A stretch of DNA of 64,000 bases from NCBI RefSeq assembly GCF_022045235.1, contig NW_027266264.1:46562001-46626000 (forward strand). The letters run 5' to 3'. Made by a program: the position numbers and the translations under genes. The notes under the pieces are model-generated. The model did not search any database and was not told where the DNA came from. It worked only from the letters and a program-made list of their open reading frames with translations. Shown piece after piece: positions 34,446 to 63,045 of this stretch; within the stretch, counting starts at the first letter, position 1, and every line of letters begins with the position of its first letter. The stretch comes from Haliotis cracherodii (Eukaryota).

Positions 34446-35573
34446 TCAGGGAGATCCTGACGCCATTCTCAGATGCGGATAGGCGGAGTATTGTCCACAG
34501 GAGAAGTGTTGTTGTAGAGCCTGGTAGGTTGCGTGAGGGTGACCGTTTCCTGCAGTGGGTGTAGGGGTTGGTGGCATATAAGCCCCACCCAGAGGCGAGC
34601 TTCCTGGAGGAGAACTGGAGAGAGGGGAGCCGGTCAGTGAGCTGTTCATGCTGCTGGCGTTGTAGTAGCCAGTTGTAGGAGAGTAGCCTGTAGGAGATCC
34701 CATTGTCCAGGTACTAGGATCAGGTTTGCTTCCTATACTGTATTGCTGGGGCTGGGTGAGTCCCTGGGGAAGGGAGCCAAGACTCAGGGGATTAAGAGCA
34801 GGGTAGGGGGACGGGCCCCCGTAGAGACTGAAATGGCCATAAGAACTCACATGCTGAATAGTGGCGTCTTCTCGGCGTTGTCTGTGCGCCAGTTTGAAAC
34901 GTTTAGCACGACGAAGGAAACTGCCGTTACCGAACATGTCCCCACAAGATGGATGCAGAGCCCAATGGTTACCCTTGCCTGGTTTCCCCGGGGGTCGGGG
35001 CACCTTGACGAAACAGTCATTGAGGGAGAGGTTGTGTCTGATGGAGTTCTGCCATCTCTGTTGGTTCTCTTTGTAATATGGAAACCTCTTCATGATGAAA
35101 CTGTATATATCGTTGAGAGTCATCATACCAGTAGGAGAACTCTCGATGGCCATGGTAATCAATGCAATGTAGGAATAGGGAGGCTTGACATTTTCAGCAA
35201 AGCGTCGATTTTGTTGAGACAGAGTTGATGTACCTGAATATTCATCTGAATCCTCGTCTTCGTCGTTGTCGGAACACACTGACGGCGATGGTGATGACTG
35301 GTTGCTCTGATCGTTGTCAGGATGCCCATGTTGCAGCAGATTGTCGCGAGTGTCGTCTGTTCCAGGAGATACTTCTGATTTGACGTCTGTTATCCCTGTC
35401 GTCAGACCTGGCATCGGGGGAAGAGACAGTGAAGGCGTGTGTGGGGACAGGATGTACGCTCCTGACATGGGAGGCCCCTGCTGCACGGCATGCGACAACG
35501 ACATCATACAGGAGGACTTGTCGTCTGCGCCACCTCCATACTGGAACAGATTTGGGCCTTGATTCAGCAACAT
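34446..35573 (-). CDS. FoxAB: Forkhead box transcription factor, FoxAB-like, copy 1 (375 aa, intronless; most canonical copy)
   Basis: Full forkhead domain [28 protein letters not shown]...[51 protein letters not shown]. Mixed FoxA/FoxB-type residues and the [15 protein letters not shown] tail fit the FoxAB subfamily. The subfamily call is from recognition, not a tree. Confidence 0.85.
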
Positions 35574-40874: not shown

Positions 40875-41981
40875 CTAAGCTTGATTTTCATAAGAAAGTG
40901 AACAAAGCGTATTTGTTTCATTCGGAAATATTGAGTTCGTAGCACTAACAAGGGAATGATGCAATGATGAATACAGACTGTGAGAATTTTGACTTCGACA
41001 TGTAGAGGGCATATGTGGCACGTTGACCCCACCCAGGGTAGAGCTTCCCGGGGGAGAGCTGGAGAGAGGGGAGCCGGTCAGGGAGCTGTTCATGCTGCTG
41101 GCGTTGTAGTAGCCGGCTGTAGGAGGAGAGTAGACTGTAGGAGATGTCATAGTCCAGGGACTGGGGTCAGGCCTATTTGCTGTGCTGTAGGCGTGTGTCT
41201 GGGTCAGTCCCTGGGTTATGGGGGGAAGACTTACGGGGCTGAAGCCAAGGTAGGGGGACTGACCTCCATATAAACCTAAAAGGCCATAAGAAGTAAGACG
41301 TTGGACGGTGGCTTCATCTTGTCGCTGTTTGTGTCCTGACTTGAAACGTTTAGAACGACGGAGGAAACTGCCGTTACCAAACATGTCCCCACAAGATGGA
41401 TGCAGAGCCCACAGGTTACCCTTGCCTGGTTTCCCCGGGGGTCGGGGCACCTTGACGAAACAGTCATTGAGGGAGAGGTTGTGTCTGATGGAGTTTTGCC
41501 ATCTCCGTTGGTTGTCTTGGTAGTATGGGAATCTCTTGACGATGTAGTTGTAGATGTCGTTGAGAGTCATCATGCCTGTTGTAGAACTCTCGACGGCCAT
41601 GGTGATGAGAGCCACATAGGAATAGGGAGGCTTCTTGTTGGAAAACTCTCTTTTCTGTTGGGAGAATGTAGACGTTCCTGGCCCACTGTTACGACTCGTG
41701 TCATCGTCGTCAGTATCTGAAGTAAGTGATGCGGGTGGTGACGGGGTAATGCTGTAATGACTCGTAGTCTCTACTGTGTGACGAGGAATGGATCTCGCTT
41801 CAGATGTAAAATGGCGTTGGTCATCGGGTACGAACTTGGATGTGTCGTCTGCTTCCTGGGCAACTGCAGACGTCCAATGAGTGACTGGAGCGTGGTGTTG
41901 AAGAAATTGGAGAGATGTCGTCTGTTGCGACATGCAGGAAGAAGCATCCTCGCTGTGTTTAAACGTGGATGGGTTAAACAT
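40875..41981 (-). CDS. FoxAB: FoxAB-like forkhead transcription factor, copy 2 (368 aa from ATG 41981)
   Basis: Intact forkhead domain. The ATG at 41981 (MFNPS) aligns with MYNPF of copies 3/4 and lies 81 bp downstream of the TATA box. AATAAA (-) at 40730-40735. Confidence 0.83.
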
Positions 41982-42059
41982 GTTTCTTGACACAAGCTCC
42001 GGGGAGAACAGTTTTATCTCAGTAGGAAGAGAAATGTTTATCCTCTCCCTCAACCACAA

Positions 42060-42199
42060 GGTTTATATTCCCTGTCGAGATTATCCCCTCGTCAAACGCT
42101 TTACAGAACTCATTTGTTTCTTGATTAGGCGTCCATTGTTTCTCCAACTGTAATGAGACTAGGAGGTGCTTGCTGTTCAGGCTACACAGAGCTGATTGG
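42060..42199 (-). promoter_or_regulatory. Core promoter of Fox copy 2
   Basis: TATAAA (-) at 42062-42067, TAATCA (-) near 42122, CCAAT (-) at 42195-42199. Confidence 0.6.
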
Positions 42200-45100
42200 T
42201 TTAAACGTTAACTCCACCTTTATAAGCATGTTATTCATCAAATGGACATGTCGCATTTTAATAATTTTGTTCAAAGAATAGAAAATGCCCTGTACGCTAT
42301 TTAGATCAACCTGTTTATTCATAAGGATTATTTAGGAAACCCTCGACAGAAATGTTTCCAAATTGATGGCATTAGCATTTAGTGTTTTACGCGTACAGTG
42401 TGTTTTGTAGTGTGTGTTTCACACCTCTTTTACACACATCAACGATGTCAACATTAATCTTATCAGGGATACTTACTGAAATATTGACATCAAAACAAAT
42501 CAGCACAACAAATTCTCGGTTTTACAATATCGATAATCACAGAAACAAACATTCCGCCAGCATACTAACTGTAGAAATAGCCGCTGAAGATGCCTCTTGG
42601 TCAACATAAGTTACCATAAGTTAATATACATAATTAATGTATGTCAATATACAAATGCGGGTGCTATTTGACAGAGGTAATGTTCTGATTCACCTAATGT
42701 TTTAAGGATTTGTCGGTTATGGCTCCAACAAAGCTAAATTTAAGACAGTACATATTTCTTACTCCTAAAATAGCCCGCCATCTTATAAGTTACGTTCTAG
42801 TAATCATGTTTATGTTATGACGTTGGGTAAATTGCACCAGTTCTTTGCAAAAATATGTAAATATGTAATAAACAGTGTGTGGGAGATTAATACCATTATC
42901 TACTTGAATTTTCCCTATTCTAAAGAACATAAGGAAAGTATACAAAGACAAATATCACAGTGTACATATTCATCCTTGTTTATAAGTTCATTCTTCTTCC
43001 AGCGCAGCCAGCAGAGAGACGCACATGTATGTTATCACTTAGAAAACTATCTACACTTGTCAACTCTGTCTTAATGCTCCATGGCACTTCGACTATGTGT
43101 ACAGCCATGTGAGGTGAGGCATTGTTATATTATATCCATGTACGTCAGTGGTTTTTGTGGAATAAGATTGTTTATAAGATAGATGTAGCGATTGTCATTA
43201 TGAATCCACATGCCTGTCATTCTATTTCGGTCAGATTAACACTTTCAATAATACGTAGGTGGATAATTTTTGAACTAGGAAATGAACATCACAAGATAAT
43301 CAAGCGCCTTGAGGTTCGTGCATTTCCGTTATTAATTACACAAGTAATCGTATCGGGGAGTCTTAATGACACATTTAATGACTTGTCGCTACACCGATGG
43401 ACGCCACAACAATTCAGCACTCCACTTCCCGCGTTGGCAGTATCGATAATCAAACGCCCTCCAGTCTGTGACAGTAGCTACACAAGGGGATTGTTGACAT
43501 AATGTGATGTATGTTTTGTTTTTCTCGCTAAGCTATATCAATTCTATAAAATCCTCATGCCATTATTTAAATCAATCTGGAATTAATAATAATGTATCGC
43601 TTGATATTGTACATTGTGTAATTTTATATATGCATTTGTGTTATGTCTACGATGTTATGTGAACAGTTATGTTTACAGTGTTATAGATACATGTTATGTA
43701 CGCTAATGTCACTTTTTACTTTTACTGAGTACAGTAAAGTTCGCTTCAGTTCGGAGAATACCTGATCCACCAAGGTGTACATGCCTTATTATTGTTCTCT
43801 TCAGAAAGGAGGAAGCCACCTTTATGAGTTCCACCACCCACAATGAACCAGACCGACCCTTGAGTCATGTACAAATGAATGTTTACGTCATTTAACAAGG
43901 GACACGTTTCTTGATTATTGTTGCGATTAGTAAACAAATATTAATAAAACTGATGATGAAAGTTCAACAGCTGCAAACATGACAAAGTTTTGTACTGATT
44001 AAACTGTAAAAGCAGGGTTGTATGTTAAGTCCGATCCTGTTATCACTCTTCATGAACTAATTACACAATGAAATGATTTTGTAAAAGAAAACAAGTGCAG
44101 AGACATTTGACTATTGGTCTTTACGCTTATGGACTAAGGTGTCATTTATTCAGTGTATTGTGTTCCCGGAGCTTTATCTGATTATGGATACTACCTCCAT
44201 GATCAGTGCATTTCTCTAGCTATCGCAATGTAGAAAGACTTCCTAAAACTTTATTTACACCAATGAGCTCATAGTGACGTATTCGCTGAGCTAACGTCTT
44301 GAACATATCCGCGCTCCTAATTACACGCTCAGCTGGTGACATTCACACGTCTTCATTGACCACGCCGTGACTTGAACATGTACATCACACCTGAACCAAA
44401 TCCCTACCCACAGGCTTCACGTGATGGACACATCGCACCCCAATCGCTGGACCCCCGGGCCTGTGTCCAGTATGGCAATCTCTGGCCCTCATTGTTGTGG
44501 TTAAACACCAGTATCAATATTGGTTCAGCAAGCTTTCATGGTTTGTGGCATGTAGGTTCAACGTTGTTTCCAGGAGAAGTTTGCTTGCTGTATTTGTAAT
44601 TTGTTGTAATCAAGCTAGATCTCTACACCATCGACCTGCTAACACGCGAAGTTGTGGACGCTTAACCTCAAGAATATGGAATATATAGACGTTGAATATA
44701 TATGAGGACTTGGAGGGAAAACCACTTCGGGGCCATCTGTAAATTAGCATTTAAATATTGTGCATTATAAACTGAATTTTAACCTGAGAAGATGTTACCA
44801 CATGAGGCGGTTTACATTGTGGTCCACAATTGTGTAACACTAATCATGTTGTTGGTAGTAGTGTTATACAGCAAATAAAGCGACACGACCCTTTCCATAT
44901 CCAATAGAAATCTCTGCATAAAGCAGTGTCGATTGTACGATTCCAACTATATCTTGAACATGTGTCTATGAATTACTGTCGAACAGTAATGACATCAAGT
45001 ATTCGCGAAAAGATGAGCGTATCCTGCCCAACCGGTGGCACCCGTCCCAAACACATGCAAAGGCAAGTCAATTGTTCACCTTAAAAACAAGTCCAAATAG

Positions 45101-47887
45101 GGAATTGCATCGGACATAATTTTTGTCACTGATGCGTAAAATTTGGAAATGTCCTTCACATGTTTACCATAATTATTTTTGAAAGCTTTACTGACGCCTT
45201 GAATTCGTATTTGTGGAAAGTATTTGGAAAGCACTGTGTCAGCACTAAGATGTCCAAAATGTTAAAGTCAATTTATGGTAATGTCAAGTCATTTTTATAT
45301 CAGCAAATGCAGTGAGCTAAAAATATCAGTACATGACGTCAGAGCTTGTATGATCAGCGCGGTGTATTTTCGTCTAAGTGAAACTGTTCAACTGTTAAAC
45401 ACCAGAACTGGAGTGGTCGGGTGCAATCCGAACAACAAACACTTGAGGCTTGATATACCCCACAGATACACTGGCATTCAGATGCTCAACACCTACAGGT
45501 TGACTTGTGTATTTTTCAGGTGTTTCATATCTATCCTGTGTGTAAATATACACGTGTTGATATGTTGGATAATATCTTGCCAGCATATGTTCTGTTGTTA
45601 TTTTTATTTTGCATAGTGTTACATGTCACTATGTTATTGGTAAGTAAAACGCTTTCCCTACCAAATGTGATCAAACCAAACACGTGTCTGTTTATATGTT
45701 TACGATTGTTGCAGACGCAGACTATCTGTTTCTCCACCTTACTGTTTACCTGACGATGTCGGTGCATTTGATGTTTCCACAGTTAACAAGAGTCAATCAG
45801 CGGATAAGGATTAGCAGACGACAGCTACCAATTTTGATTTATCAAATTGAGATTATCAGTTGTAATTACAAGCGGTTGGGTATTTGCTGTTTTCTGTAAG
45901 CTTATTTTCTTAATTTACCTGTGAGGTACAACCAGCTTTATTAAGTAAGCCAATTTTCAGAATTGGCTTACCTCAAACCGCTTTTCTTCCTTCACATCCA
46001 TCGAGTCGGAGGATGAAGGTAAGTAAGATGGCGACGATGGTGGACTTTCCCTCATGCGACAGACGTCAAGATCCAATTTTCACAGAAGGCCGATATTTAG
46101 TCACCTATAAGTCACCTATAATGTCAAATCATGTCATGTTTGCATTGACCTTAAGTTTGAATCGCTCTATCCTCGTGGGATGTACGTACAAACAGCGATG
46201 TCTGAAAGGTTCCCCTCCGTTAACATATAATGACGTCATTGTCTGTTTAGGGCATTACCTTTCGTTAACAAATCATAACGTCATTGTCTATTTAGCGCAA
46301 TTGTGATTATTGTTATGTATTAGTGATGCACCATCAACTGTAGACATTACCACTCTACATCATTTAATGTAAGTTGAATATTTATTATATTAACCATGTT
46401 TATATGACACGTACGGCGGTAAATATCTCATTGTTCCTATAAAACAAACATAATTATAAAAGTATCCCATATGCTCCTTATAATCTATAATTCATACAGT
46501 TTTGCATAATTGAATATTCTTTTAAATTTGACGCAACAGAAGGTACTTCACGTTACATCACAGGGCGTCAGTTTCATGTAGGAAAGACGCAGCTTATAGA
46601 AGGGAAACCCGAGAGAATGGATATGTATGGTAGTATAAGGTAATGTACATCATGGGTAACAACTATGTTTAGAACATATAGTTTATATATTTATTTATAT
46701 CAATCATGTTTTACTGTCTCTCATAACCTAATGGATGAGTGGCTTTCGTGCATCTTTTTATGATTTTACACAATATTTTGCTTTTCCTTTGGAAGAGAGG
46801 CCGGTCACGTGACTGTGATGACTGACGTTCACAAGTGTATGAAAAACACACTTTGATGTTCAATACGTTTTTCACGAGAATGTATTCTTGAAATGACCGT
46901 AAACACTGACAGACTACTTACACATACAACAGCGTTGTTTCTGATCATTCAGACCCTTTAATCTTGAACTCATACATTGAGAAACGTCAGAGAGTTTGAC
47001 TGCATGATCGTTCCCGAATATCCTCGCTACGACCCACCCTAGTGGACAAAACATAGACATGCTTATCCACTATCGTAGTATCGACTCGATCCGTGTCTAG
47101 ACTCACAGTGACAGCCTACAACAATCTATGAATTTACCTTGGTATCTATTTGACACATCTTTACAATTACCTTTCAATGATCGGCCAACTGATCAATGAT
47201 GACCAACACATGTAACCACCACAGGTAGGTTTTCCGTGTCGGCCATTCTGACGTCTTGTACGTGATGTAAATGTATTACGACGCGCTGTCATTGTGACTT
47301 ACTGAGGTAGTTCTTAAAAGACCTTTCTCACCCAGTGATGATATTATTTGAATACAATTCTTGTAAACAAACTACAACAGATGTTCCTGAAAAGCAAGTT
47401 GAGCATACAGACGCTCGCGTCACCTCTCTGGGGAACTATTTTATTCCGCGATACAGCTGGTTGTTGTATGGCCGTCAGTCAGTGCAAACATGAAGTAACA
47501 CGTATAGACCTAGTGCTACATCTCTTGGGGTATAAAAAAATGATATAAAACATAAGAGAATCTGGGATCCGAACACTTGACAAGCGGATGTTCGGACGCA
47601 ATTCTTCGCAACGAGATACGGCGTAATGAACTAGAGGGCCAGTTCCAGGACGCTTCATCGGTTAGAGAGAGAGAGTCCCTCCTGGACACAAAGTGAAGGA
47701 CTCACTTCCGGCTTAGGTGCCCTTTGATGATGCCGACGGCCAGGTGTTCCACGTGCCGAGTCTGAATACTTCAGTACGTTCAAGTAAATAAATACAAGTC
47801 GCCATTACAAGTCTGGGGAAGTCTGATCTCCTGTAAATCCTAAACATCCTATGTACACATAGTCTTGACTTAATAATGTTGAGTTAA

Positions 47888-47980
47888 GTTATTCGAACCC
47901 TCGATCATAGGTTTTTGGCGTGTCCAAGAGGCACAATTCAGCACAGCGGCGCCCTATACAACTGGGCCAACCGTGCCTCC
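47888..47980 (-). mobile_element. SINE family B 5' fragment
   Basis: attcgaaccc...ggcgtgtccaag.ggcacaa...actgggccaaccgtgcc matches the head at 40185-40281. Confidence 0.7.
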
Positions 47981-48369
47981 GCAGAGGTAGATATGTTTTT
48001 TAAACATGGCATATATTTGAAAAGTTTGTGGCAAAAATCTTTTTGAGCTCGATTCAGCTGTTTTATCGTTTTATCTTGCTATTGCTATAGTTGTCCTTAA
48101 TATTGTCGGGGAGTCAGGATAGGATGAACTCCCGCATGCCACCTAAAGGGGGACAGCGTGCCACCGTTAGCTGCCCTTTTCATTCTAGGTAAACACGTTG
48201 ACTCGAGGCAAGTGGTCAGTGGTTTTCAATGCTACAGGGAAGTTGCGATTTCAGTTATTTCGTAAAATGCCAAGACATTTCGTGCCCATATCTATGTTCA
48301 TAGTGATATATTTGTCCCCACTGGCAATGACGCACAGAATTAAGCGACCTGTATATGACCTCGCGGATC

Positions 48370-48640
48370 TAGTGTTCATATCCTGGTATATGTCTTTTGC
48401 AGAATCGGACATTGGCTGTTGTATGGGTGAGTGCAGCTAGTCACAGGAGAGAGGGCAGCCGTATCGTGTAGGCACCACCCAGGGGAGAGCTATCGAAGGA
48501 GACTTGGAGAGGGGGGAGCCGGTCTGATCCCATGTTCAGATCCCATAGTGCAGGTTCTGGGGTCAGACTTGCCCTATGTGCTGTGGGGATGTGTCTAGGT
48601 CAGTCCCAGGGGTAAGGGGTCAAGATTCAGGGGGTTGAAA
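48370..48640 (-). pseudogene. Relic FoxAB-like copy: C-terminal coding portion only, forkhead box absent
   Basis: Collinear with copy 3 at ~53075-53391: 'gaatcggacattggctgttgtatg', 'ggagaggggggagccggtc', 'gatcccat', 'tgtgctgtggggatgtgtctaggtcagtcccaggggtaagg..tcagggggttgaa'. Similarity stops before the forkhead box. Confidence 0.8.
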
Positions 48641-51600
48641 ATTAAAGGTGAATCATCTTGCGGCCTGGGTATACAATGTATAATTTTCCCAGATAAACTC
48701 TCTTCATTGAGATCTGTTGTTTTTTTAAATTCAGTATGAAAATAACAAATAACATTTATAATGATACTGTCGCTTCACTTTTAACGTATTGCTTTAAACA
48801 TTTGCATTAACATTCTAAACTGATTATTCACGTCGAATCTGCATAACGACTGTACGTACATATACATGTAAAGATATTACTGATATACGGGGTCACAATC
48901 AACCTTGTGTGACAGCCAACGTTTCTCGGCGTCGACAGGCGAGCACGATTTAGGACACGCCGCACACAATTAGTTTGCAACTAATTACATACTAATGGTT
49001 TGACGTTTCACCTCAATTTTCCACAGGGTACCTGGATTATGTGCATCACGCCCAGATAAAAATCCTCGCCCAGGGGCATCAGGTGACGAATCCAGTTTCT
49101 CCCCAAGGCCTATGTCCCGTGTCCTGTCGGAGTAAATACCAGGGTCAATATTGATTCTGACCCATATGTCTGCTCCATGACATGGTACCTGTTTCCTTGG
49201 AAAGTTTCCAGCCTGTAGTAACTGGAGTAGGTAGAATAATATCAGATTGAAGACATTATCTATCCAATGAAGCCTTCAATATGTCCAAATAAGTGTTTTT
49301 CAGATGTGTTTCAAACTCGACAACGTGTTTGAGCAATTGTATGTAACTGGATACCAGCGCTATATATATATCCATATATGTATGTATGTAACAAAAGAAT
49401 ACTATCCTATACATTAATTATGGTTTACGACTTCGCAACCGTCTTTGTACAAATGATGTAAAATTATTCTTTAGGTTATTTGCCTTCATTAATCAAATTC
49501 TTTTATCTCTTCTTGTTGTGTTGTGTTGCGACTTATTTTTCACAAAATTGTACACGTGCACATCTCTGTGCATATAAGTCTGCATGTTTATACTTCTACA
49601 TGTACAAAATTGTATATATATAATGTTACTGTATGTATATGGGCCTATGGCCAGAATACAATAAATGATGATGATGATGATGTAATGTGTATAACTAAGA
49701 TAACAAACTCCACACATGAAATATATTTATATGTTACAGTAAAAGTGTAAAATGACTGAAATTTTCACTTGTGCAATTTACTAAACGCCAAACAGCTCAG
49801 TCAATTTACAATACATCCTTCCATTCATTATATTATGATAATGAAATTCCAAACATTTGTATGCTCTCTGTCACATAAATCGTGTTATGTAGGTATGAAG
49901 TAAAACGTGTCATACTAATGTGATGGTCATAAGTTGGGCAACCATACAGACTGAAGACACGTAAAACATGCCATGTAAATGTCCCAAAAAACATTTTACA
50001 CAAAAAAATAAATCCTAGCTATTTACTTCATGACCCAGTCTATGACGATATAGCGGTTGTTTCGTCACTTTAACTCCCAATGATGACGTCAATTTACAAA
50101 TTATATAGACCTTGAATTTGATTCAATTATTTGGATATGCCATTGTCAAACTTTAGATTTGAAATGAGTTTAGTCTATTGCCATATAGCCTAAGTTAATG
50201 CTTATTGTCCATTTAAAGTTGTTTTATTTGTCAAATGGCTATGTGTATATGTAACATGGAAGGATCAATTTGAGACTGGAGAATATGTCCCCACTGAAAC
50301 TCGTAAAGCATTTGAACCAGGACAAGCTGACACAAGTAATCGTAACGGGGAGACTTAATGGTGCGTTAAATGAGTTGTCTCTGCACTCAGATGTCATAAT
50401 AAATCAACAAATCTAACAGCTGTAAAAACATCCAATCTGTGCCAGCAGCTAATCCAATGTGGATCGTAAATCATCGTTCTGGGATATATAAGATAGAAAA
50501 TGTTAAAGGATATTACTAGTATTTACAAAACAGAACAAAACTGATTGATAGATGTGATCTTCAAAAATTCATCTATGGCTGATTGTCATTACAGGTATAC
50601 TCTTCCCTTTAAAAAGAAGAAGATTTGTTTGGACACTTGCTGAATTAACATGACTATACTATAACACACGCATTCGTGTAAATACTTTACTTATTTCCAT
50701 CTGAACGCCTTAAGCATGTTGTCATTAGAGTGACAAAACAAGTGGTTACAATGTTAACATGCTGTTTTGATGTCAGTAGCAGGATGAAACTGTCTGTTTC
50801 TCCACCTCAACGTTTTACCTGACGATGTCGGCATATTTGATGTTTCTATAAGGTAACAAGATTCAATCAACCCTGGATTAGGGCTTGTGGGGTTAAGCAA
50901 TTGTGGCTTGATCAAATACAGATTACCATTTGTCGGTTTCCTGTTTGCTTAGCTTCCTAATTTACCGGTAAGGAACAACCAGCTTTATTAAGCAAGCAAT
51001 GACGAACATTATCCGATCTTGTGAATTGGCCTACCAGAAACCGCTTATCTCCCTTTACCATTCTCCCGTCAGTGGATGAATGTAAGTAAGATGGCGACAT
51101 AGTGGACTTTACTGCACGCGACAGACATTCAAATCCAATTTCACAGAAGGCCGACTTAATACCTTTTAATATGCATATTATATATATACACATATATATA
51201 TTTGTATAAGGGGTATGTAACAAAACGAAAACAACCACATAGTTCTACATGTCTACCTTCATGTCATCTTGTCATGTGCTTTATTTCATACATAAATGAT
51301 GTAGTTCTAATGAAAATAAAGGGTAATTGATTGGAACATCTTAACGTTGTTTTGTGTGTTGTTTTACATCATTCACAACGCACGTGTGTGAATCTCATCT
51401 TGTCAAAGCCTTGGTTCATACCAGATTGATTTGATGAGCATGTGGATGCTTTTGAAGATATATTTTCACGATCATTAGGTCTAGAGCCAATTTACACTGA
51501 ATACTACATGGAATCAAGGTTATCATTTTACATTTATGATCACTATTCCAATATCCCCCACGACCTTCCCCAGGCGCCTGATAATTCTGATATTAATGTT

Positions 51601-53022
51601 CATAAGCGTTTTCTCTCAAACTTATTATTTTATACACAAATTGTTTATTCTGCACAGTCACACATTGCATCGTAATCAAGGCAAATCTGGGATTCGAACC
51701 CACATCACACTATGTCACTCCATTGACACAGGCCCACATCCACGAGCTGAGACATTGATTATGTTTGTTGCTTCTGCTGGTGTAAACCAATGTGCATGTT
51801 TATGTATAATCGGTTACATGCCTTTGGGTAAAAGTTTAAGAATAATAGCAATAATGTTCTTACTGGAAGAATGGCTAATGTTCACAGGTGTCCACAATGC
51901 TAGAAATTCCGCCTGTGTCCGGCTTCTGATGGGTTGGATTTAAGATGGGTACGAGGTGACAAACGTGTTTTCAACTTATGTTACTTAATTACATTAATCC
52001 AACTTAAACACATGCAAAAATACACGATGAGTCTAAACTATGATCAATTCATAAAAGGGGTTAATTACCGATAGTTCTTTTTCTGTCCTGGCATGTTCAC
52101 AAGCATGTATAAGTGGATCGGTTTAATATTTAGGAAATAAGCATTTTGTGTTTCAGCGTAGAGTTGGTTAACTGTAGATATAACCATGCAAAATTGAATT
52201 CTGAATAAAAGGAGATCACATTGAAACAAGACATGACATTGTTTCCTTTGAATTCTTATTTGTATTCACCAAAAGCTTGCAGGTGTCACTATAGGATGTA
52301 TGTAATAGATATAGTACTGACACAACTTCTCTGTCTATCTCAGCGCGCAAGCAGATACTCGAGTTCTACAAACTATACCGTGACTGCAGATCGTACAAAC
52401 TCCACCATCACATTCGGAGCAGATTGCACGATTACATATAAACTGTCCGGATCATGCAGTTACGTTTGTTGTTGAAGGCCTGAATTTTGAATGTACACGT
52501 TTCACGAAGCTGGAGAGTTTCACGCCTTTATAAACTGTTTACTTTGGAATACTTTATCAGTGTAAAATGTACTCCATCATCACAAAACAGTGACTATCCA
52601 TTGGACAAAAGTATTTGCCTGTGCTCTAAGGGATACTTGTAGCTGAATCGGCTTGTACACCGCAAGGCAGCAGGTCTCGGGGTGCACACGACAGAGGTGT
52701 ATAAAATACAAATGTACAAATAAGTCTTGTTAATTTCATTTATTTTATTTCTATATTTAGTTCATGTTGTACATTATGTAACCATAAGTATTTTACCTGA
52801 ACGCAACATATTGTTACTGTAAGGCAATATATACCGTATGTTTTCAGTTAAATACACACAATACATATTTGACAATACAGATATGATATTGTCAGTAGTA
52901 TTGCCATCATATTCAAAGCCACGAATTGTCTGTCATGCACCAGATGTTGAATCAACTTATATTCCTATATAGCACTTGTGTATATCAGTCTTCATTATCG
53001 CACCAGCAGGGGTGTATCTACA

Positions 53023-54099
53023 CTAAGCATGGTATGATCTCGTGGACCTTGTGCCCCAACTCTGACTGATGTCGTTTGAAGAATCAGTCATTGACTGTTG
53101 TATGTTTGGATACAGGTAGTTGCAGGAAGGGTCAGGTATGCTTAAACTGGGTGAGGGAACTTGTGGCGCGTATGTTCCGGCCAGTGGAGAGCTTCCCGGG
53201 GGAGAGCTGGAGAGAGGGGAACCGGTCAGAGAACTGTTGATACTTCTGGTGTTGTAGTAGCCGGCTGTAGGAGGAGAGTAGCCTGTAGGAGATCCCATGG
53301 TCCAGATACAGGGGTCCGGTTTGCCTATTGTGCTGTAGGGGTGTGTCTGGGTCAGTCCCGGGGGTAAGGAGCCGTGACTCAGGGGGTTGAAGCTTGTGTA
53401 AGGAGATGGACCCCCATACAATCCCAATAACTGTCCGTAAGGACTGGCAGGATGGAATGAAGGATCTTCTCGACGTTGCTTTTGTGCGGACTTGAAACGC
53501 TTAGAACGACGAAGGAAACTGCCGTTACCAAACATGTCCCCACAAGATGGATGCAGAGCCCACAGGTTACCCTTGCCTGGTTTCCCCGGGGGTCGGGGCA
53601 CCTTGACGAAACAGTCATTGAGGGAGAGGTTGTGTCTGATGGAGTTTTGCCATCTCCGTTGGTTGTCTTGGTAGTATGGGAATCTCTTGACGATGTAGTT
53701 GTAGATGTCGTTGAGAGTCATCATGCCTGTTGTAGAACTCTCGACGGCCATGGTGATGAGAGCCACATAGGAATAGGGAGGCTTCTTGTTGGAAAATCGT
53801 CTGTCTTGTTGTGAGAGGGTGGATGTTCCCGAGAAACCGTCCCCTTCTCCGTTCGAGGATACCGATGAGGTAGGAGACGGAAGAATGTTGTCATAATTTG
53901 GAGATCCTTGTTGCGTGTGACCTGATCCATGTGTGATCAGGGATCTGACGTCTTCTCCCTCAGTAGCTCCAGATGTCTGAGACACGACTGGGACGGAGTG
54001 TTGTGAAGATATGGAGTGATCAGATGGAAGAGGTGTCATCTGCTGTCCCATGAAGGGAGATGTACCTGGGACATACTGGAACATGAATGGGTTATACAT
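53023..54099 (-). CDS. FoxAB: FoxAB-like forkhead transcription factor, copy 3 (358 aa)
   Basis: Intact intronless ORF and forkhead domain. TATAAA (-) at 54183-54188, CCAAT (-) at 54334-54338, AATAAA (-) at 52739-52749. Confidence 0.85.
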
Positions 54100-55129
54100 G
54101 ATTCCTGGCTCAATGTGCAGCAGGTGAGAAATGTATTACCTCAGTAGGCAGAGGAATGTTTATCCCCCTCGTCACGGCGAGGTTTATAGTCCCTGACCAG
54201 ATAATCCCCTCAACACGCGCTTTACAGATCTCAATTGCCTCTAGATTAGGTAGCCTTTGATATGTAAATAACCGTATGTCGTCACTGATAATGGGCGTCG
54301 CTCTAAAACATCTTTCAAAAGTTTTTAGGTACGATTGGTCAAGAGCTATAATCTCGCCGTTCACTTGTGAGTTGCATTACAGTATATGAAATATGTGCTA
54401 TTATTCGCACGAAAGACGTTACATCCACCAGTGTGTTCATAACGATGACGGAAAGTAATAAAAAAACACTAGATTACAATAAGTGTGTTAATGGTTAAAT
54501 AGTTGTAGCATGGATTCCTTTCGAAAGGCTTATAGACTTTGAAGATGTCGAAAGAAAAGGCACCTCACATTTAGTATTTATAGAAGTTGGTATACAATAT
54601 GAACGATCTTGTGACTTCTACTCGACTGTAGAAGTGTCACCATGTTCAGTATATGTATATTGTGGACGAGGAACCGGTTGGTTCAAGTCTAAGTAAAGTT
54701 TATGTTCTGTTCAGTACATAGCTGACACCAACAATCGTATTGGGTAGACATATTGCTGTTTTCTCAAGGATTGTCACCGAGCTTATTGATATCCCAACAA
54801 ACCAAAACCACACTATCAAGGGCTGTCAGTATCGGTCATCACAAATACAACAACAACCTGTCGGTGTTAAAAGCTCAAATGTAGGTGGTTGTATTGGCAT
54901 TGCTACTGTGTGCAATACTCGAAGATGGGGACGTGCCAAAAATTGCACCATAAGATGATTTTGTTTATGTTGACATTGATTATTAAAAATATATTTGTCT
55001 AAGATACTATAAAACCACCACAATAATATACTATATACGTTTCATTATGGGTGCAGATAGAATATGGCTGATTTCGGCGTTAAACAACAATGTAAACAAT
55101 CAACTGTGTATAGTTCAGGCTGCAGACAG

Positions 55130-56050
55130 AGTATCTCACAGCATAAATATATTAGTGTAAAAGGGGTATATAAAATATACTACCGGTCACTAGCCATATA
55201 AAATATGTTTTCTTAGTTGGAGAATTAAAATGTAGGTTTGGGCTGTGTAATATACATAATATTTATAAAGTAAAATAAGTTTATCAGTATTAATAACTCT
55301 AGTAAGTTGGAATAGCTAAAACTGACCTTTGCGTATAAACCTTCACGCAAATCATCGTACACAGGGAAATCCAACAATACATGACATTCATCCCCAACAC
55401 TTTCCTGACACTGAAAACACACTCTTTCATTCACATTCATATTCGAATATCTGCCTGTTTCCAACTTCAGATCTAAGAAGGCAGAGTGGTTTAGAACGAG
55501 GCATATGCATACTAACATAACTTTCACACCCATACACATCTTTAAACATTCTATACGTACGTAAGTTATTACCACCCGTTCTTCCGAGAGGCTTGCGTAA
55601 CAGTTCATTCCAATCAGTCACATAAAATCCCAGGCAGATAACCTGCACACCTGCAAGTACACTTTTCACGCTCACATTCTCTAAAATATTCAACCCCCAT
55701 TCGTTCAGCTTTGCCAGTATATCAAACGTACACAAGCATACCGTTCAGACCACATAAAACATTCTTATTTAATCTAAGGAGGTTCTAGTAAAACGATAAT
55801 ACTGTAACAATACACATCCACTATCTAACTGTCGGAGGAATCCATCCCATATCTCCATTAACAGCAACATTTGGAGCGTATTTACCCAATCCTAAAATAA
55901 ATCTCAAAGCACGATGGTGAACGGCATTTACAGTAGAAATGTCACGATGACCCCAGATAGATGCCCAAAGATTCAAGACTGACCAAACCATCGTATCGTA
56001 CAATTTGGAATAAGCAGTGGATTGCATACGTCCGATTGCCTTAGCATTGT
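55130..56050 (-). mobile_element. LINE 3'-end fragment (L2/CR1-like)
   Basis: 'YSKLYDTMV..VL..ASIWG...ALRFILG...PNVAV.GDMGW', 'NLRTYRMFK', 'LKLETGRY...ERVCFQC...DECHVLLD.P.Y'. Related to 31790-32524. Confidence 0.8.
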
Positions 56051-56589
56051 AGTCAAAATGTGTGAGTGAGGTTGGTTTAACACGGCTTTGACACTACACA
56101 TGCTGTCCATTTACATGGTGCTGTACTAAGTAAACAAATGCTAATAATTACAATCTCAAAATGAGCCATTAAATGACCAAAGTCACCATAGGCTGTCTGA
56201 AAGATGTACACCACACCCTGTAGGATAACCCCTCACCCAAGGGCGTCAGGTGACATATCCGCGGACACCAGTGTCTTCCCCGGGTCTATGTCCTGTAGCT
56301 ATAGAAGTAAGCACTAGGGTCAATATTGATTCAGACCCGTACATGCTTACGAAATATGCAGATATTTCAGTTTATTCACGAAATGCACATATCTACACAT
56401 ATCGACACATATGCACAATGTATAATTAACATATTCGAGGTTATAAAACCCAAATTAAACTATACGATTATAGTGTCAAAAGTAAAATTATATAAATTAT
56501 AAATTCTCTTATCGATCGGGTACAATATTTTGCTTGATGCTTTGACAGATACAGATATCAATAACATGCTGTGATTAATGGCACTGAAA

Positions 56590-56915
56590 GAACAAGCCAT
56601 GCGTTGCAAGGAGTTCCAGTATTCCAAAAGATCAAAGAAGCAGGACTAAACATGCAAATGTAAATGTGCGACAAAATAAGTCACCCACTTAGGGCATATT
56701 TTCAGCAAAGATGGCATCCATGCCAATATACTTCAAAAATAGATTCAGTCACAGAGATCCCACCCTCTAAAAATGTCCATGACGTGTGTCACTTCTTAGA
56801 TTTGGTCTCGTATGATCACAAATTTGTAACACAAATTCTGGTATCGCCTCCCCCTCTATACAATCTTCTGAAAAAAGACGCATCTCTCAAATTGTGGCAA
56901 ATTAGGGCAACTTGA
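56590..56915 (+). mobile_element. Ty3/gypsy pol (RT thumb/connection) fragment
   Basis: 'LGHIFSKDGI', 'KIDSVTEIPPSKNVHDVCHFLDLVSYDHKFV...PLYNLLKKD'. Confidence 0.75.
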
Positions 56916-59900
56916 TTCTCATGGCGTAACTTGGAGTGATGTTGTTAAACCGCGTCTTTTGACCATACAAGAATCTTCCTGTTCTGATTTTTAGGAACAA
57001 ACAATGTTGACTGGTAACGTTTCGTTTTCGTCAGTTTTCAAGGAAGGGTATATGGTGCTTTATGATCATTTCCCATCACAGTCAACAACTGTTATGGCCT
57101 GATGAAATGGAAGGTTTGAAATGATTATTAATAAATAAAGGTTACAGGCCTACTGTCTCTCTGTCAAAAACACTGTATTGATCAGGATGTCCATATTGTG
57201 ATCCAGATGGAGGCTGAGTTTTTTTTATTGAAATAAAATTAAGAACCCCCCCCTCCCCCAGAAATGACACAATCAAATGACACAAGTAATCGTAATGGGG
57301 AGACTTAATGGTGCGTTAAATAAGTTGTCTCTACACTCACAGACATCACAACAAATCAACACCATGCTCTGTCACATTGTCAGCACATGTAACAGCAGTA
57401 ACAACATCCAATCTGTGTCAGTAGCAGTGGATGTGCGGAATATTATTCTGGGATAGTAAAGGTATACAATCTTAGAGGATAGTAGTTTTAATGCTGAACA
57501 AAAATGACTGACTAAGCTGGCAAAATAGAAATGAATTCCCTGACTGAATGCCATCATATTTTTCTTTAAACAAGAATACGTGTTCTTTTCTTTAATTAAG
57601 AAGACATGTACATGGTTATGCTACATATGAATACACTTGATATGTTACTAAATACTGAAAGTTTATTAGAACAGAGAAAGCTAGCACAATTTGTAAAATA
57701 AAAAGTAGTATGTAGTATATACTGTATGTATAAAATGTAGTGTTACACACGCCTTTGTGTCACTACTTTACATCTGTCCATAAGTATGTTGTCATTAGAG
57801 TGTGGTTACAATGCTAGAGTGGTCAGAAGCAGGGTGGGGCGAATTTGATGACTACATGAGTGACCGAGTCACTCAACCCTGGATTGGAGCTTGTGATGCG
57901 AAGCTAGGCCGCTACCAATTTTGGTTTGATCAAATAGAGATTATCATTTGTCGGTTTCCTGTTTGCTTAGCTTCCTAATTTACCTGAAAGGAACAACCCG
58001 TTTTGTTTAGCTACCAAAGACTAAACTTATCCGATCTTCAGAATTGACTTACCTCCGGATCAGAGGATGAAGGTAAGTTAGATGGCGACAGAGGCGGACG
58101 ATACTGCGCGCGACAGACATTCAAATTCAATTTCACAGAAGGCCGACTTAATAACGATATATATTTATACCCATCCACCCAAGGGTTGCCCAAAAGATTA
58201 CCTTGTCCAAACTTAGCATTGGTTCACCGAATATTCTAATCAATTACCCTTTATTTTCATTAGAAGTACATCATTGATGTATGAAATATGTAGAACTGTG
58301 TGGTTGTTGTTTTTTGTTTTAAGATAACAACACATAAATAAATCGTACTTATTATCAAATAGAAGAAAATGCCTTTCTCACATCACTTTTCTTTAAAAAA
58401 TAATGGCATATTCTTACATTCTTAAAGTGTTTTTTTTTTATTTCTTCACGTAACACGTGCTAAGTATACATACTATTACACACGTCAGTACTTTACTTAT
58501 TTCCATGTACACGCCTTAAGCATGTTGTCATTAGAGTGATAAAAGAAGTGGTTGCAATGTTAACATGCTGTTTTGATGTCAGTAGCAGGGTGAGACTGTC
58601 TGTTTCTCCACCCCAAGATTTTACCTGACGATGTCGGCATATTTGATGTTTCTATAAGGTAACAAGATTCAATCAACCCTGGATTAGGGCTTGTGGGGTT
58701 AAGCAATTGTGGTTTGATCAAATACAGATTACCATTTGTCGGCTTCGTATTTGCTTAGTCTCCTAATTTACAAGTAATGAACAACCAGCTTTATTCAGCA
58801 AGCAAATGACGGACATTATCCGATCTTGTGAATTGGCTTACCAGAAACCGCTTATCTCCCTTTACCATTCTCCCGTCAGTGGATGAAGGTAAGTAAGATG
58901 GCGACAGAGTGGACTTTACTGCACGCGACAGAGGGATTCAAATCCAATTTCACAGAAGGCCGACTTAATACCTTTTAATATGCATATTATATATATACAT
59001 ACAGATATAAACTGATATAAAGAAGATGATGTACTAACGTGGACTTTATTATTTTATTATATATTACATGTACACCGAGTGAACATTTACCTCATTTTTG
59101 TATATATATATATATATTTACATGTAACAAAACGAAAACAACCACATAGTTCTACATGTTGCCTTCATGTCATCTTGTCATGTGCTTTATTTCATACATA
59201 AATGATGTAGTTCTAATGAAAATATAGGGTAAATGATTGGAACATCTTAACGTTGTTTTGTGTGTTGTTTTACATCATTCACAACGCACGTGTGTGAATC
59301 TCATCTTGTCAAAGCCTTGGTTCATACCAGATTGATTTGATGAGCATGTGGATGCTTATGAAGATATATTTTCACGATCATTAGGTCTAGAGCCAATTTA
59401 CACTTAATACTACATGGAATCAAGGTTATCATTTTACATTTATGATCACTATTCCAATATCCCCCACGACCTTCCCCAGGCGCCTGATAATTCTGATATT
59501 AATGTTCATAAGCGTACTCACCTTCTCTCAAACTTATTATTTTATACACAAATTGTTTATTCTGCACAGTCACACATTGCATCGTAATCAAGGCAAATCT
59601 GGGATTCGAACCCACATCACACTATGTCACTCCATTGACACAGGCCCACATCCACGAGCTGAGACATTGATTATGTTTGTTGCTTCTGCTGGTGTAAACC
59701 AATGTGCATGTTTATGTATAATCGGTTACATGCCTTTGGGTAAAAGTTTAAGAATAATAGCAATAATGTTCTTACTGGAAGAATGGCTAATGTTCACAGG
59801 TGTCCACAATGCTAGAAATTCCGCCTGTGTCCGGCTTCTGATGGGTTGGATTTAAGATGGGTACGAGGTGACAAACGTGTTTTCAACTTATGTTACTTAA

Positions 59901-60933
59901 TTACATTAATCCAACTTAAACACATGCAAAAATACACGATGAGTCTAAACTATGATCAATTCATAAAAGGGGTTAATTACCGATAGTTCTTTTTCTGTCC
60001 TGGCATGTTCACAAGCATGTATAAGTGGATCGGTTAATATTTAGGAAATAAGCATTTTGTGTTTTAGCGTAGAGTTGGTTAACTGTAGATATAACCATGC
60101 AAAATTGAATTCTGAATAAAAGGAGATCACATTGAAACAAGACATGACATTGTTTCCTTTGAATTCTTATTTGTATTCACCAAAAGCTTGCAGGTGTCAC
60201 TATAGGATGTATGTAATAGATATAGTACTGACACAACTTCTCTGTCTATCTCAGCGCGCAAGCAGATACTCGAGTTCTACAAACTATACCGTGACTGCAG
60301 ATCGTACAAACTCCACCATCACATTCGGAGCAGATTGCACGATTACATATAAACTGTCCGGATCATGCAGTTACGTTTGTTGTTGAAGGCCTGAATTTTG
60401 AATGTACACGTTTCACGAAGCTGGAGAGTTTCACGCCTTTATAAACTGTTTACTTTGGAATACTTTATCAGTGTAAAATGTACTCCATCATCACAAAACA
60501 GTGACTATCCATTGGACAAAAGTATTTGCCTGTGCTCTAAGGGATACTTGTAGCTGAATCGGCTTGTACACCGCAAGGCAGCAGGTCTCGGGGTGCACAC
60601 GACAGAGGTGTATAAAATACAAATGTACAAATAAGTCTTGTTAATTTCATTTATTTTATTTCTATATTTAGTTCATGTTGTACATTATGTAACCATAAGT
60701 ATTTTACCTGAACGCAACATATTGTTACTGTAAGGCAATATATACCGTATGTTTTCAGTTAAATACACACAATACATATTTGACAATACAGATATGATAT
60801 TGTCAGTAGTATTGCCATCATATTCAAAGCCACGAATTGTCTGTCATGCACCAGATGTTGAATCAACTTATATTCCTATATAGCACTTGTGTATATCAGT
60901 CTTCATTATCGCACCAGCAGGGGTGTATCTACA

Positions 60934-62010: not shown

Positions 62011-63045
62011 GATTCCTGGCTCAATGTGCAGCAGGTGAGAAATGTATTACCTCAGTAGGCAGAGGAATGTTTATCCCCCTCGTCACGGCGAGGTTTATAG
62101 TCCCTGGCCAGATAATCCCCTCAACACGCGCTTTACAGATCTCAATTGCCTCTAGATTAGGTAGCCTTTGATATGTAAATAACCGTATGTCGTCACTGAT
62201 AATGGGCGTCGCTCTAAAACATCTTTCAAAAGTTTTTAGGTACGATTGGTCAAGAGCTATAATCTCGCCGTTCACTTGTGAGTTGCATTACAGTATATGA
62301 AATATGTGCTATTATTCGCACGAAAGACGTTACATCCACCAGCGTGTTCATAACGATGACGGAAAGTAATAAAAAAACACTAGATTACAATAAGTGTGTT
62401 AATGGTTAAATAGTTGTAGCATGGATTCCTTTCGAAAGGCTTATAGACTTTGGAGATGTCGAAAGAAAAGGCACCTCACATTTAGTATTTATAGAAGTTG
62501 GTATACAATATGAACGATCTTGTGACTTCTACTCGACTGTAGAAGTGTCACCATGTTCAGTATATGTATATTGTGGACGAGGAACCGGTTGGTTCAAGTC
62601 TAAGTAAAGTTTATGTTCTGTTCTGTTCAGTACATAGCTGACACCAACAATCGTATTGGGTAGACATATTGCTGTTTTCTCAAGGATTGTCACCGAGCTT
62701 ATTGATATCCCAACAAACCAAAACCACACTATCAAGGGCTGTCAGTATCGGTCATCACAAATACAACAACAACCTGTCGGTGTTAAAAGCTCAAATGTAG
62801 GTGGTTGTATTGGCATTGCTACTGTGTGCAATACTCGAAGATGGGGACGTGCCAAAAATTGCACCATAAGATGATTTTGTTTATGTTGACATTGATTATT
62901 AAAAATATATTTGTCTAAGATACTATAAAACCACCACAATAATATACTATATACGTTTCATTATGGGTGCAGATAGAATATGGCTGATTTCGGCGTTAAA
63001 CAACAATGTAAACAATCAACTGTGTATAGTTCAGGCTGCAGACAG

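What the first reader, a model, noticed from the sequence alone, without database searches (positions are those of the whole stretch)
41362..53796. Gene conversion confined to the forkhead box: 284 identical bp between otherwise divergent copies 2 and 3
Seen: 41362-41645 and 53513-53796 are base-for-base identical including all synonymous sites, while the N-terminal coding regions are barely alignable. Copy 3 differs from its near-identical twin copy 4 at four CDS positions, all within the forkhead box (53500/61411, 53527/61438, 53530/61441, 53670/61581). At three of these, copy 3 carries the copy-2 base. Inference: a conversion tract moved between copies 2 and 3 after the 3/4 split, so concerted evolution keeps the DNA-binding domain uniform while the effector regions diverge.
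Basis: partly seen in the sequence, partly recalled or inferred. Interest (0 to 1): 0.8.

Follow-up and report, generated by a model that had tools for sequence, protein, structure and literature searches.

The report
Forkhead-box gene conversion in abalone FoxAB array
A tandem array of ten forkhead transcription-factor genes in the black abalone keeps its DNA-binding box almost letter-identical by repeated copying between the genes, while the rest of each gene has diverged to saturation. The mechanism is well known; this lineage-specific example is clean and apparently undescribed.

Summary
Window 41362-41645 and 53513-53796 are identical over 284 bp. Copies 3 and 4 differ at exactly four CDS positions, all inside the forkhead (FH) box.

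The general interpretation, interlocus gene conversion, is strongly supported, but the event is not a pairwise curiosity. The window holds four of ten single-exon FoxAB-type genes spread over about 100 kb of Haliotis cracherodii chromosome C1. Among copies 2-10 the 309-nt FH box differs at only 2-13 sites (pS 0-0.15). N-terminal pS is 0.6-0.85 and C-terminal pS is 0.28-0.55.

Supporting evidence:
- Region trees are incongruent.
- 20 gene pairs carry significant identical fragments.
- Half of the informative FH site pairs fail the four-gamete test.
- FH residues are species-specific across all paralogs in four Haliotis species, although the C-terminal regions define cross-species ortholog groups. 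That is classic concerted evolution.

The specific claim, a tract moving from copy 2 into copy 3 after the 3/4 split, is not established. With copy 5 (outside the window) as outgroup, copy 4 is the derived copy at three of the four sites, and the fourth site is ambiguous.

Conversion is also not strictly confined to the box: there is a second trough at a C-terminal motif, and pair-specific tracts run past the box.

This is a known mechanism in a new instance. The scan had also noted this stretch in other readings.

The parts
34446..35573 (-). Copy 1 (c1). Intact 375-aa single-exon forkhead gene, the conservative FoxAB-type founder of the array.
   Evidence: ORF. Pfam Forkhead, 131 bits. It shares the pre-FH and post-FH motifs with the single-copy relatives in Owenia, Lingula, Diadema and Gigantopelta. 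Its H. rufescens ortholog P0009 has an identical C-terminal region.
34933..35048 (-). Tract in c1 (helix 3 to wing 1) that is identical to c3 over 82 nt plus 32 nt, separated by one codon.
   Evidence: Sliding pS for c1-c3 is 0.02-0.12 here, against 0.56-0.67 in the first half of the same box.
40875..41981 (-). Copy 2 (c2). Intact 368-aa ORF starting at the ATG at 41981. The open frame runs on to a TTG at 42059.
   Evidence: The NCBI model for this gene (P0017, 206 aa) is shorter and has a different C-terminal end.
41340..41645 (-). FH box of c2 (306 nt). Positions 41362-41645 are the 284 nt identical to c3. From 41361 downstream c2 switches to the c6 haplotype.
   Evidence: The c2-c6 run of 36 matching polymorphic sites spans codons 234-266.
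48353..48639 (-). Relic of a C-terminal gene fragment between c2 and c3. It has no FH box.
   Evidence: tblastn with the c3 protein: aa 237-276 and 292-356 match at 60% and 43% identity.
50683..58488 (-). Copy-3 repeat unit of about 7.9 kb, one of three near-identical tandem units (c3, c4, c5).
   Evidence: blastn: 51215-58500 against 59122-66418 is 99.5% identical; 50683-54269 against the c5 unit is 98.2% identical.
53023..54099 (-). Copy 3 (c3). Intact 358-aa gene.
   Evidence: Its H. rufescens ortholog P0001 is 97% identical.
53491..53796 (-). FH box of c3. Positions 53513-53796 are identical to c2.
   Evidence: Contigs of the probable source sample match with 0 differences, and the assembly graph branches at 53796|53797 in 4 runs covering 3 species.
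58489..64000 (-). Copy-4 repeat unit. It runs past the end of the window.
60934..62010 (-). Copy 4 (c4). Intact 358-aa gene that differs from c3 at 4 nt (one amino acid, Q to E).
61402..61707 (-). FH box of c4. It is derived at 61411, 61438 and 61441 when c5 is used as outgroup. The states at 61438, 61441 and 61581 equal those of c7.

Best explanation
The window covers the first four genes of a ten-gene, roughly 100-kb tandem array of intronless FoxAB-type forkhead genes on chromosome C1 of Haliotis cracherodii. Copy 1 is the conservative founder and copies 2-10 are a derived abalone subfamily.

The paralog lineages are old. Their N- and C-terminal regions are saturated at synonymous sites, and at least three or four of them have orthologs in H. 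rubra and H. asinina.

The roughly 306-nt forkhead box is repeatedly overwritten between copies by homology-dependent repair. This is mainly non-allelic (interlocus) gene conversion, with occasional unequal crossing-over that uses the box as the crossover site. The 284-bp c2/c3 identity is one young tract of this ongoing process.

Inferred, not shown: protein-level constraint on the DNA-binding domain keeps the boxes similar enough for heteroduplex formation. Conversion then erases the synonymous differences. The indel-rich, fast-evolving flanks stop the tracts, which explains why the boundaries sit sharply at the domain edges. The loop reinforces itself.

The same recombination produces chimeric genes. 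For example, c6 has the N-terminus of c7 and the post-box segment of c2.

After the recent c3/c4/c5 triplication the box went on exchanging. Copy 4 most likely received short patches from c7-like and other donors. A c2-c3 exchange probably postdates the c5 split. Its direction, and whether it postdates the 3/4 split, remain open.
For: Shown here:
- Exact 284-bp identity.
- Ten copies in one array, all with intact ORFs.
- pS in the FH box is 0-0.15 among c2-c10, against 0.6-0.85 in the N-terminal and 0.28-0.55 in the C-terminal regions. The sliding-window trough coincides with the box.
- The first half of the c1 box has pS 0.56-0.67 against the others, so synonymous sites in this box are free to vary.
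- 20 pairs carry identical fragments with permutation p<=0.0005, and the extents are pair-specific.
- Region trees are incongruent. N-terminal region: c6 and c7 are twins. Post-FH region: (c2,c6) 98, (c3-5,c7) 100, (c9,c10) 98. FH tree: c2-c10 lie within 0.03 substitutions per site.
- 32 of 66 informative site pairs in the box show all four gametes.
- GC3 is 0.64-0.67 in the box, 0.45-0.56 in the flanks and 0.55 in the c1 box.
- Cross-species test. FH position 37 is V in all 9 H. cracherodii and 2 H. rufescens copies, and I in all 4 H. rubra and 6 H. asinina copies. Position 19 is I in all 6 H. asinina copies and V elsewhere. The C-terminal tree nevertheless groups orthologs across species: c8+rubra+asinina 98/97, c6+rufescens 100/100, and the c3/c7 type with rubra and asinina 97/99.
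- Post-duplication exchange. The 4 c3/c4 differences fall within 171 bp, none in the surrounding 2 kb (P 0.007). All four states are present in other copies.
- Reads. Contigs of the probable source sample confirm the haplotype pieces and junctions. Another individual and two other species show the same branch point at the 5' edge of the box.
Against: - No long reads or raw read pairs link the variable sites inside the box to the unique flanks. The runs were available only as k=31 contigs.
- FH differences do not rise with physical distance between copies (Mantel p 0.11 and 0.56), so no proximity effect is seen.
- The GC3 excess is modest, and another single-copy Fox gene in this genome has FH GC3 of 0.62.
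- Donor, recipient and order of the individual events cannot be resolved. Competing three-event histories fit the c3/c4/c5 site patterns equally well.
Confidence: 0.9

Rival explanations
1. One reading: one tract passed from copy 2 into copy 3 after the c3/c4 duplication. This would explain three of the four c3/c4 differences and the 284-bp identity.
For: - c3 equals c2 at 53527, 53530 and 53670.
- A contiguous c2 tract over codons 149-243 would deliver all three states at once.
- Zero differences in 284 bp fits a very young event. P(0) is at least 0.5 if the event is younger than the 3/4 split, and about 0.05 if it is older than the c5 split (rates).
Against: - c5, the outgroup to c3+c4 in the flanks (20 sites against 0 and 2), carries the c3 states at 53500, 53527 and 53530. 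Parsimony therefore makes c4 the changed copy.
- The c4 states at two of these sites match c7.
- Rescuing the c2-to-c3 history needs an extra c3-to-c5 conversion and a separate change at 53500.
- The H. rufescens ortholog has Q, as c3 does, so c3 may simply be ancestral at 53670.
- The direction c3 to c2 explains the identity equally well.
Confidence: 0.35
2. There is no conversion. The box is identical because of purifying selection on synonymous sites (codon use, RNA structure, an overlapping element) or because of a local mutational cold spot.
For: - The box is the most constrained part of the protein (pN about 0.007).
- A long antisense ORF exists opposite the c1 box.
Against: - The first half of the c1 box has pS 0.56-0.67 against c2-c10 at the same codons.
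- Identical runs are pair-specific and extend past the box.
- Four-gamete failures are frequent.
- Replacement changes are shared by all paralogs within a species but differ between species.
- The conserved 8-codon pre-box motif GTSTLSQQ has pS 0.42 despite pN 0.065.
Confidence: 0.03
3. Assembly artefact. Either paralogs were mis-polished so that the boxes look alike, or c3/c4/c5 are haplotypes wrongly placed in tandem.
For: - c3, c4 and c5 are 98-99.5% identical with a 7.9-kb period.
- At 54432 every run laid, including the probable source sample, shows only the c4 base.
- Contigs cannot link sites inside the box to the flanks.
Against: - Independent Logan contigs of the probable source sample reproduce the c3/c5 haplotype piece, the 269-nt shared piece and both junctions with 0 differences. 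The shared piece has about twice the depth of its flanks.
- An independent individual shows a depth step consistent with several trio-type copies.
- Nine boxes keep 20 distinct variable sites rather than collapsing to one sequence.
- NCBI protein models from three other Haliotis assemblies show the same invariant box with divergent flanks.
Confidence: 0.03
4. The main mechanism is reciprocal unequal crossing-over with breakpoints in the box (module shuffling and birth-and-death), not non-reciprocal conversion. The shared boxes would then be by-products of recent chimeric gene formation.
For: - c6 and c7 share the N-terminal region (pS 0.03) but have different C-terminal lineages.
- The recent 7.9-kb triplication and two relics show that array units turn over.
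Against: - The c2/c3 tract is an internal patch with divergent sequence on both sides. One crossover cannot make that.
- The short 1-3-site patches in c4 and the fine-scale reticulation within 309 bp fit conversion better.
- The non-coding flanks of c2 and c3 are not alignable.
Confidence: 0.15

Closest known systems
Interlocus (ectopic) gene conversion with mosaic divergence in tandem paralogs. Examples: mammalian gene pairs under concerted evolution for over 100 My (PMC2720389), HMA4 in Arabidopsis halleri (PMC3749932; 10.1101/2025.10.29.685298), TLR1/TLR6 (PMC2077338).
   Same: Low synonymous divergence restricted to part of the gene, sharp tract edges, incongruent trees by region, and paralogs more alike within a species than orthologs are between species.
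   Different: Here nine or ten paralogs of a developmental transcription factor take part. The homogenised island coincides with the DNA-binding domain, and the rest of the coding sequence is saturated. These papers were found by title and abstract only and were not read in full.
Gene conversion among tandem homeobox paralogs (eutherian ETCHbox / PRD-class genes, PMC8208926).
   Same: Lineage-specific tandem expansion of a DNA-binding transcription-factor family, shaped by duplication, loss, divergence and gene conversion.
   Different: A different DNA-binding fold and a different host lineage. Domain-restricted conversion was not compared in detail, because only the abstract was seen.
FoxAB class of forkhead genes (Saccoglossus, PMC4077281; Owenia, 10.1101/2022.03.02.482670).
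   Same: Copy 1 shares the pre-box and post-box motifs with the relatives in Owenia (two proteins, matching the two published foxAB paralogs), Lingula, Diadema and other molluscs. Vertebrate hits cover only the box. The genome has a separate canonical FoxB.
   Different: FoxAB is reported as single-copy in most animals and two-copy in Owenia. Here there are ten copies, and nine carry a derived box. No formal class phylogeny with labelled reference sequences was made.

Membership tests
Forkhead (winged-helix) transcription factors, Pfam PF00250 | A complete forkhead domain scoring above the curated cut-off. | tested here: met
   126-131 bits against a cut-off of 27, covering profile positions 1-87 of 88, for c1, c2 and c3.
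FoxAB class | The forkhead domain groups with labelled FoxAB orthologs, to the exclusion of FoxA and FoxB, in a class phylogeny. | not tested
   No labelled FoxAB reference sequences could be brought in by reference. Only indirect evidence is available (next row).
FoxAB class | Taxonomic distribution and distinctness from FoxB: present in spiralians, echinoderms and brachiopods, absent from vertebrates, and separate from the genome's own FoxB. | tested here: inconclusive
   full-length relatives occur in Owenia (2), Lingula, Diadema, Gigantopelta, Liolophura and Aplysia. Vertebrate hits cover 27-33% of the query, which is about the length of the box; a canonical FoxB (L012) lies elsewhere on C1. 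NCBI's automatic names vary (lin-31-like, B1/B2/D1/D2/E1/E3/E4-like) and do not settle the class.
Concerted evolution by interlocus gene conversion | Paralogs within a species are more alike than orthologs between species in the affected region, while the flanks show orthology. | tested here: met
   Tested at protein level only. FH positions 19 and 37 are fixed per species across all paralogs. The C-terminal tree recovers cross-species ortholog groups with 97-100% support.
Concerted evolution by interlocus gene conversion | A region-restricted collapse of synonymous divergence. | tested here: met
   pS is 0-0.15 in the box and 0.28-0.85 outside it.
Concerted evolution by interlocus gene conversion | Statistically significant shared fragments and recombination signals (GENECONV-type run test, incongruent trees, four-gamete test). 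| tested here: met
   20 pairs at p<=0.0005; region trees conflict with 98-100% support; 32 of 66 site pairs are incompatible.
Concerted evolution by interlocus gene conversion | GC-biased signature in the converted region. | tested here: inconclusive
   GC3 is 0.64-0.67 in the box and 0.45-0.56 in the flanks. One single-copy Fox gene in the same genome also has FH GC3 of 0.62.
Concerted evolution by interlocus gene conversion | Haplotypes confirmed on single molecules that span a whole copy. | not testable with these tools
   only k=31 contigs were laid.

The most novel reading that the evidence does not exclude
Homogenisation may be selected rather than passive. In this reading the abalone lineage runs a 'one DNA-binding domain, many effector domains' system. 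Nine FoxAB paralogs are held to one binding specificity by conversion, so any adaptive change in the box spreads to all of them, as the V/I replacements did. Their N- and C-terminal regions and promoters meanwhile diversify, and box-mediated recombination shuffles N- and C-terminal modules into new combinations such as c6.
Probability: 0.2. Interest if true: 0.65.

Novelty: new member of a known kind. Interest (0 to 1): 0.45.

Why it matters
FoxAB is normally a single-copy developmental regulator with a poorly known function. A ten-gene array in abalone is a marked lineage-specific expansion.

The array is a very clean natural example of domain-restricted concerted evolution. It has a saturated N-terminus, a near-identical DNA-binding box, a diverged C-terminus, recombinant genes, and species-specific fixation of box residues across all paralogs.

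There are practical consequences:
- Trees built from the forkhead domain alone, which is the usual practice for classifying Fox genes, would wrongly date these duplications as recent and species-specific.
- Short-read variant calling and gene models in this cluster will be unreliable.

The array could also be used to estimate conversion rates, tract lengths and the homology threshold in a mollusc. It could help test whether uniformity of the DNA-binding domain among diverging paralogs is selected.

Tried and rejected
- I therefore could not fetch independent contigs or orthologous DNA, and the cross-species test is at protein level only.
- Read laying. All four runs were available only as Logan k=31 contigs. 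These break at every paralog variant, so they could not link 53670 or 53500-53530 to the c3 flanks, and their depths are only rough. The single raw-read run (X21) would have been sampled at under 2x, so I did not use it.
- Physical proximity as a predictor of box similarity: not significant (Mantel p 0.11; 0.56 without c4 and c5).
- Reconstructing the donor and recipient of each patch in c2, c3, c4 and c5. Alternative three-event histories fit equally well, so I gave this up.
- A first iqtree run failed on a thread setting. I repeated it.
- The first repeat finder was swamped by a 37-bp satellite. I used blastn self-comparison instead.
- Literature searches for FoxAB together with gene conversion, and for Haliotis Fox gene families, found no description of this array in the held library. 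That library is incomplete.
- I rejected synonymous constraint, polishing artefact and pure unequal crossing-over as sole explanations (see rivals).
Full report
**1. The observation**

Window 41362-41645 and 53513-53796 are letter-for-letter identical over 284 nt, and the identity ends at once on both sides.

Both stretches lie on the minus strand inside intact single-exon ORFs with a complete Pfam Forkhead domain. The four genes in the window are:
- c1, 34446-35573
- c2, 40875-41981 (first ATG at 41981)
- c3, 53023-54099
- c4, 60934-62010

c3 and c4 sit in tandem units of about 7.9 kb that are 99.5% identical. Between 52155 and 54195 the two units differ only at 53500, 53527, 53530 and 53670. 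All four positions are in the forkhead (FH) box.

At three of these positions c3 has the c2 base, and at 53500 c4 has it.

**2. Is it more than chance or constraint?**

For c2 against c3 (Nei-Gojobori):

| Region | dS | dN |
|---|---|---|
| FH box | 0.03 | 0 |
| N-terminal | 1.44 | 0.52 |
| C-terminal | 0.72 | 0.36 |

A run test on polymorphic sites gives 47 consecutive matching sites for c2-c3, with p<=0.0005.

Synonymous constraint does not explain this. The first half of the c1 box has pS 0.56-0.67 against the other copies at the very same codons. The conserved 8-codon motif just upstream of the box has pS 0.42.

**3. The real extent**

A search of the whole assembly with the box found ten copies on contig C1 between 46.597 and 46.697 Mb, plus a short relic. 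All ten have intact ORFs of 357-375 aa. I fetched the 80 kb beyond the window.

Findings among c2-c10:
- The 309-nt box differs at only 2-13 positions. c1 differs from them at 37-41 positions.
- pS is 0-0.15 in the box, 0.6-0.85 in the N-terminal regions and 0.28-0.55 in the C-terminal regions.
- The sliding-window trough coincides with the box. A second, shallower trough (pS 0.16-0.26) lies over the C-terminal motif GYYN...[13 protein letters not shown].
- c1 shares an 82+32-nt identical tract with c3 over helix 3 and wing 1, at window 34933-35048.

The homogenisation is therefore array-wide, and it is not strictly confined to the box.

**4. Mosaic structure**

Twenty gene pairs have significant identical fragments, with pair-specific extents. 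Examples are c2-c6 over codons 234-266, c3-c7 over 240-268, c9-c10 over 253-279, and c6-c7 across the N-terminal region.

The region trees conflict:
- c6 and c7 are N-terminal twins (pS 0.03).
- Just after the box, c6 groups with c2 (98%) and c7 groups with c3/c4/c5 (100%).
- In the box tree, c2-c10 lie within 0.03 substitutions per site and are unresolved.

Inside the box, 32 of 66 informative site pairs show all four gametes.

c2 itself is a recombinant. It is c3-like from codon 149 to at least codon 232, and c6-like from codon 244 onward.

GC3 is 0.64-0.67 in the box, 0.45-0.56 in the flanks and 0.55 in the c1 box. This fits GC-biased conversion but does not prove it.

**5. Organism, gene class and the cross-species test**

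The protein search returned models named Haliotis cracherodii on a contig of 89,134,964 bp, which is the length of C1. The genome is therefore black abalone.

Relatives with the same architecture occur in H. rufescens, H. rubra and H. asinina.

Outside Haliotis, the full-length relatives resemble c1 in the box and in the flanking motifs. They come from two Owenia proteins, Lingula, Diadema, Gigantopelta, Liolophura and Aplysia. Several points fit the FoxAB class:
- c1 looks like the founder and c2-c10 like a derived subfamily.
- The genome has a separate canonical FoxB.
- Vertebrate hits cover only the box.
- The literature reports FoxAB as absent from vertebrates, single-copy in Saccoglossus and two-copy in Owenia.

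I did not make a formal class tree.

The key test is the cross-species comparison:
- The C-terminal regions recover cross-species ortholog groups: c8+rubra+asinina 98/97, c6+rufescens 100/100, and the c3/c7 type with rubra and asinina 97/99.
- Yet box residue 37 is V in all 9 cracherodii and both rufescens copies, and I in all 4 rubra and all 6 asinina copies.
- Box residue 19 is I in all asinina copies and V in the other three species.

Replacements have thus been fixed across all paralogs within lineages. This is the defining pattern of concerted evolution, shown here at protein level only.

**6.

c5 lies just beyond the window and is a third near-twin of c3 and c4. In the flanks between 51800 and 54270, outside the box, 20 sites group c3 with c4 against c5. 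None groups c3 with c5, and 2 group c4 with c5.

With c5 as outgroup:
- c4 is derived at 53500, 53527 and 53530.
- The c4 states at 53527 and 53530, and at the Q/E site, equal those of c7.
- Only 53670 can be derived in c3. The H. rufescens ortholog has Q, as c3 does, and E occurs only in cracherodii c4, c5, c7 and c8. The polarity at this site is therefore ambiguous.

Some exchange after the duplication is well supported:
- Four differences fall in the box against 0.74 expected (P 0.007).
- c4-private changes number 3 in the box, against 3 in about 2.75 kb outside it (from the site list).
- All four variant states pre-exist in other copies.

The data favour c4 as a recipient at least as much as c3.

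The perfect c2-c3 identity is unlikely if their last exchange predates the c5 split. About 2.9 differences would be expected, giving P(0) of about 0.05. This does not date the exchange after the 3/4 split, and it does not give the direction. A three-event history with c2 converting c3, and a three-event history with c4 as the recipient, fit equally well.

**7. Reads**

One read-laying run was allowed, and all four runs were available only as k=31 contigs.

Contigs of the probable source sample reproduce three pieces with no difference:
- 53470-53557, which carries the c3/c5 haplotype
- 53528-53796, the shared tract, at about twice the flank depth
- 53767-54195

An independent individual and two other species also have contigs that begin exactly at 53767. 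This means the assembly graph branches at the 5' edge of the box in all of them.

**8. Mechanism and verdict**

Shown: region-restricted loss of synonymous divergence, mosaicism, recombination signals and species-wise fixation.

Inferred: repeated non-allelic gene conversion, with some unequal crossing-over. It is sustained because protein constraint keeps the boxes similar enough to pair, and it is bounded because the indel-rich flanks block heteroduplex extension. Whether uniformity of the DNA-binding domain is itself selected is open.

The mechanism is textbook. The instance appears undescribed in the held literature. It is a ten-gene FoxAB array in abalone with a homogenised DNA-binding box and shuffled terminal modules. 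I rate it as a new member of a known kind, of moderate interest.

Noticed in passing
window 1770-4200: A long tandem array of a 37-bp unit, more than 60 copies at about 90% identity, with strong G-over-C skew (GC skew 0.64 in 2001-4000).
   Followed up: no
window 7415-8242: A tandem array of a 39-bp unit, about 21 copies at 93-96% identity. Another first-reader note reads it as an amplified splice site.
   Followed up: no
window 29836-31059: A low-complexity tandem repeat that yields long ORFs on both strands (VSVFPPCVCLPSLCLS-type units), with strong A-over-T and G-over-C skew. It is probably a minisatellite and not a gene.
   Followed up: no
window 24641-25168 and 31790-32524: Fragments of mobile elements: an ORF resembling a Tc1/mariner-type transposase, and an ORF resembling a reverse transcriptase. 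These identifications rest on motifs seen in the translations only.
   Followed up: no
window 48353-48639 (minus strand): A relic of a FoxAB-type gene between c2 and c3 that keeps only the C-terminal part (c3 aa 237-276 and 292-356). A second relic, holding the end of the box and the post-box segment, lies at G000:C1:46678473-46678621 between c7 and c8.
   Followed up: partly
window 50683-51214 compared with 58489-59121 and the c5 unit: Downstream of the genes, the relationship among the c3, c4 and c5 units changes. Here c3 and c4 are only 93.9% alike, and sites grouping c3 with c5 or c4 with c5 dominate. c4 also has a 96-bp insertion. So the non-coding part of the units is mosaic too.
   Followed up: partly
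window 54432 and 54702: At these two c3/c4 differences upstream of the gene, the contigs of the probable source sample show only the c4 state (C at 54432, and a TGTTC insertion at 54702). At 54432 the other three runs laid also show only C. The c3 states may be a rare allele that the contig assembler dropped, or an assembly error.
   Followed up: no
c2 (window 40875-41981) and c10 (L007): The NCBI protein models for these two genes (P0017, 206 aa; P0012, 238 aa) start at an internal Met inside the forkhead box. The c2 model also ends in a different C-terminal sequence. Yet full-length ORFs homologous to the other copies are intact, so the gene models in this cluster look unreliable.
   Followed up: partly
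G000:C1:8889503-8889773 (L012) and G000:C34:54059003-54059164 (L011): Two other forkhead genes of this genome: a canonical FoxB (it begins MPRPGRNSY...) and a 464-aa Fox gene of another class. I used them only as single-copy controls for GC3.
   Followed up: partly
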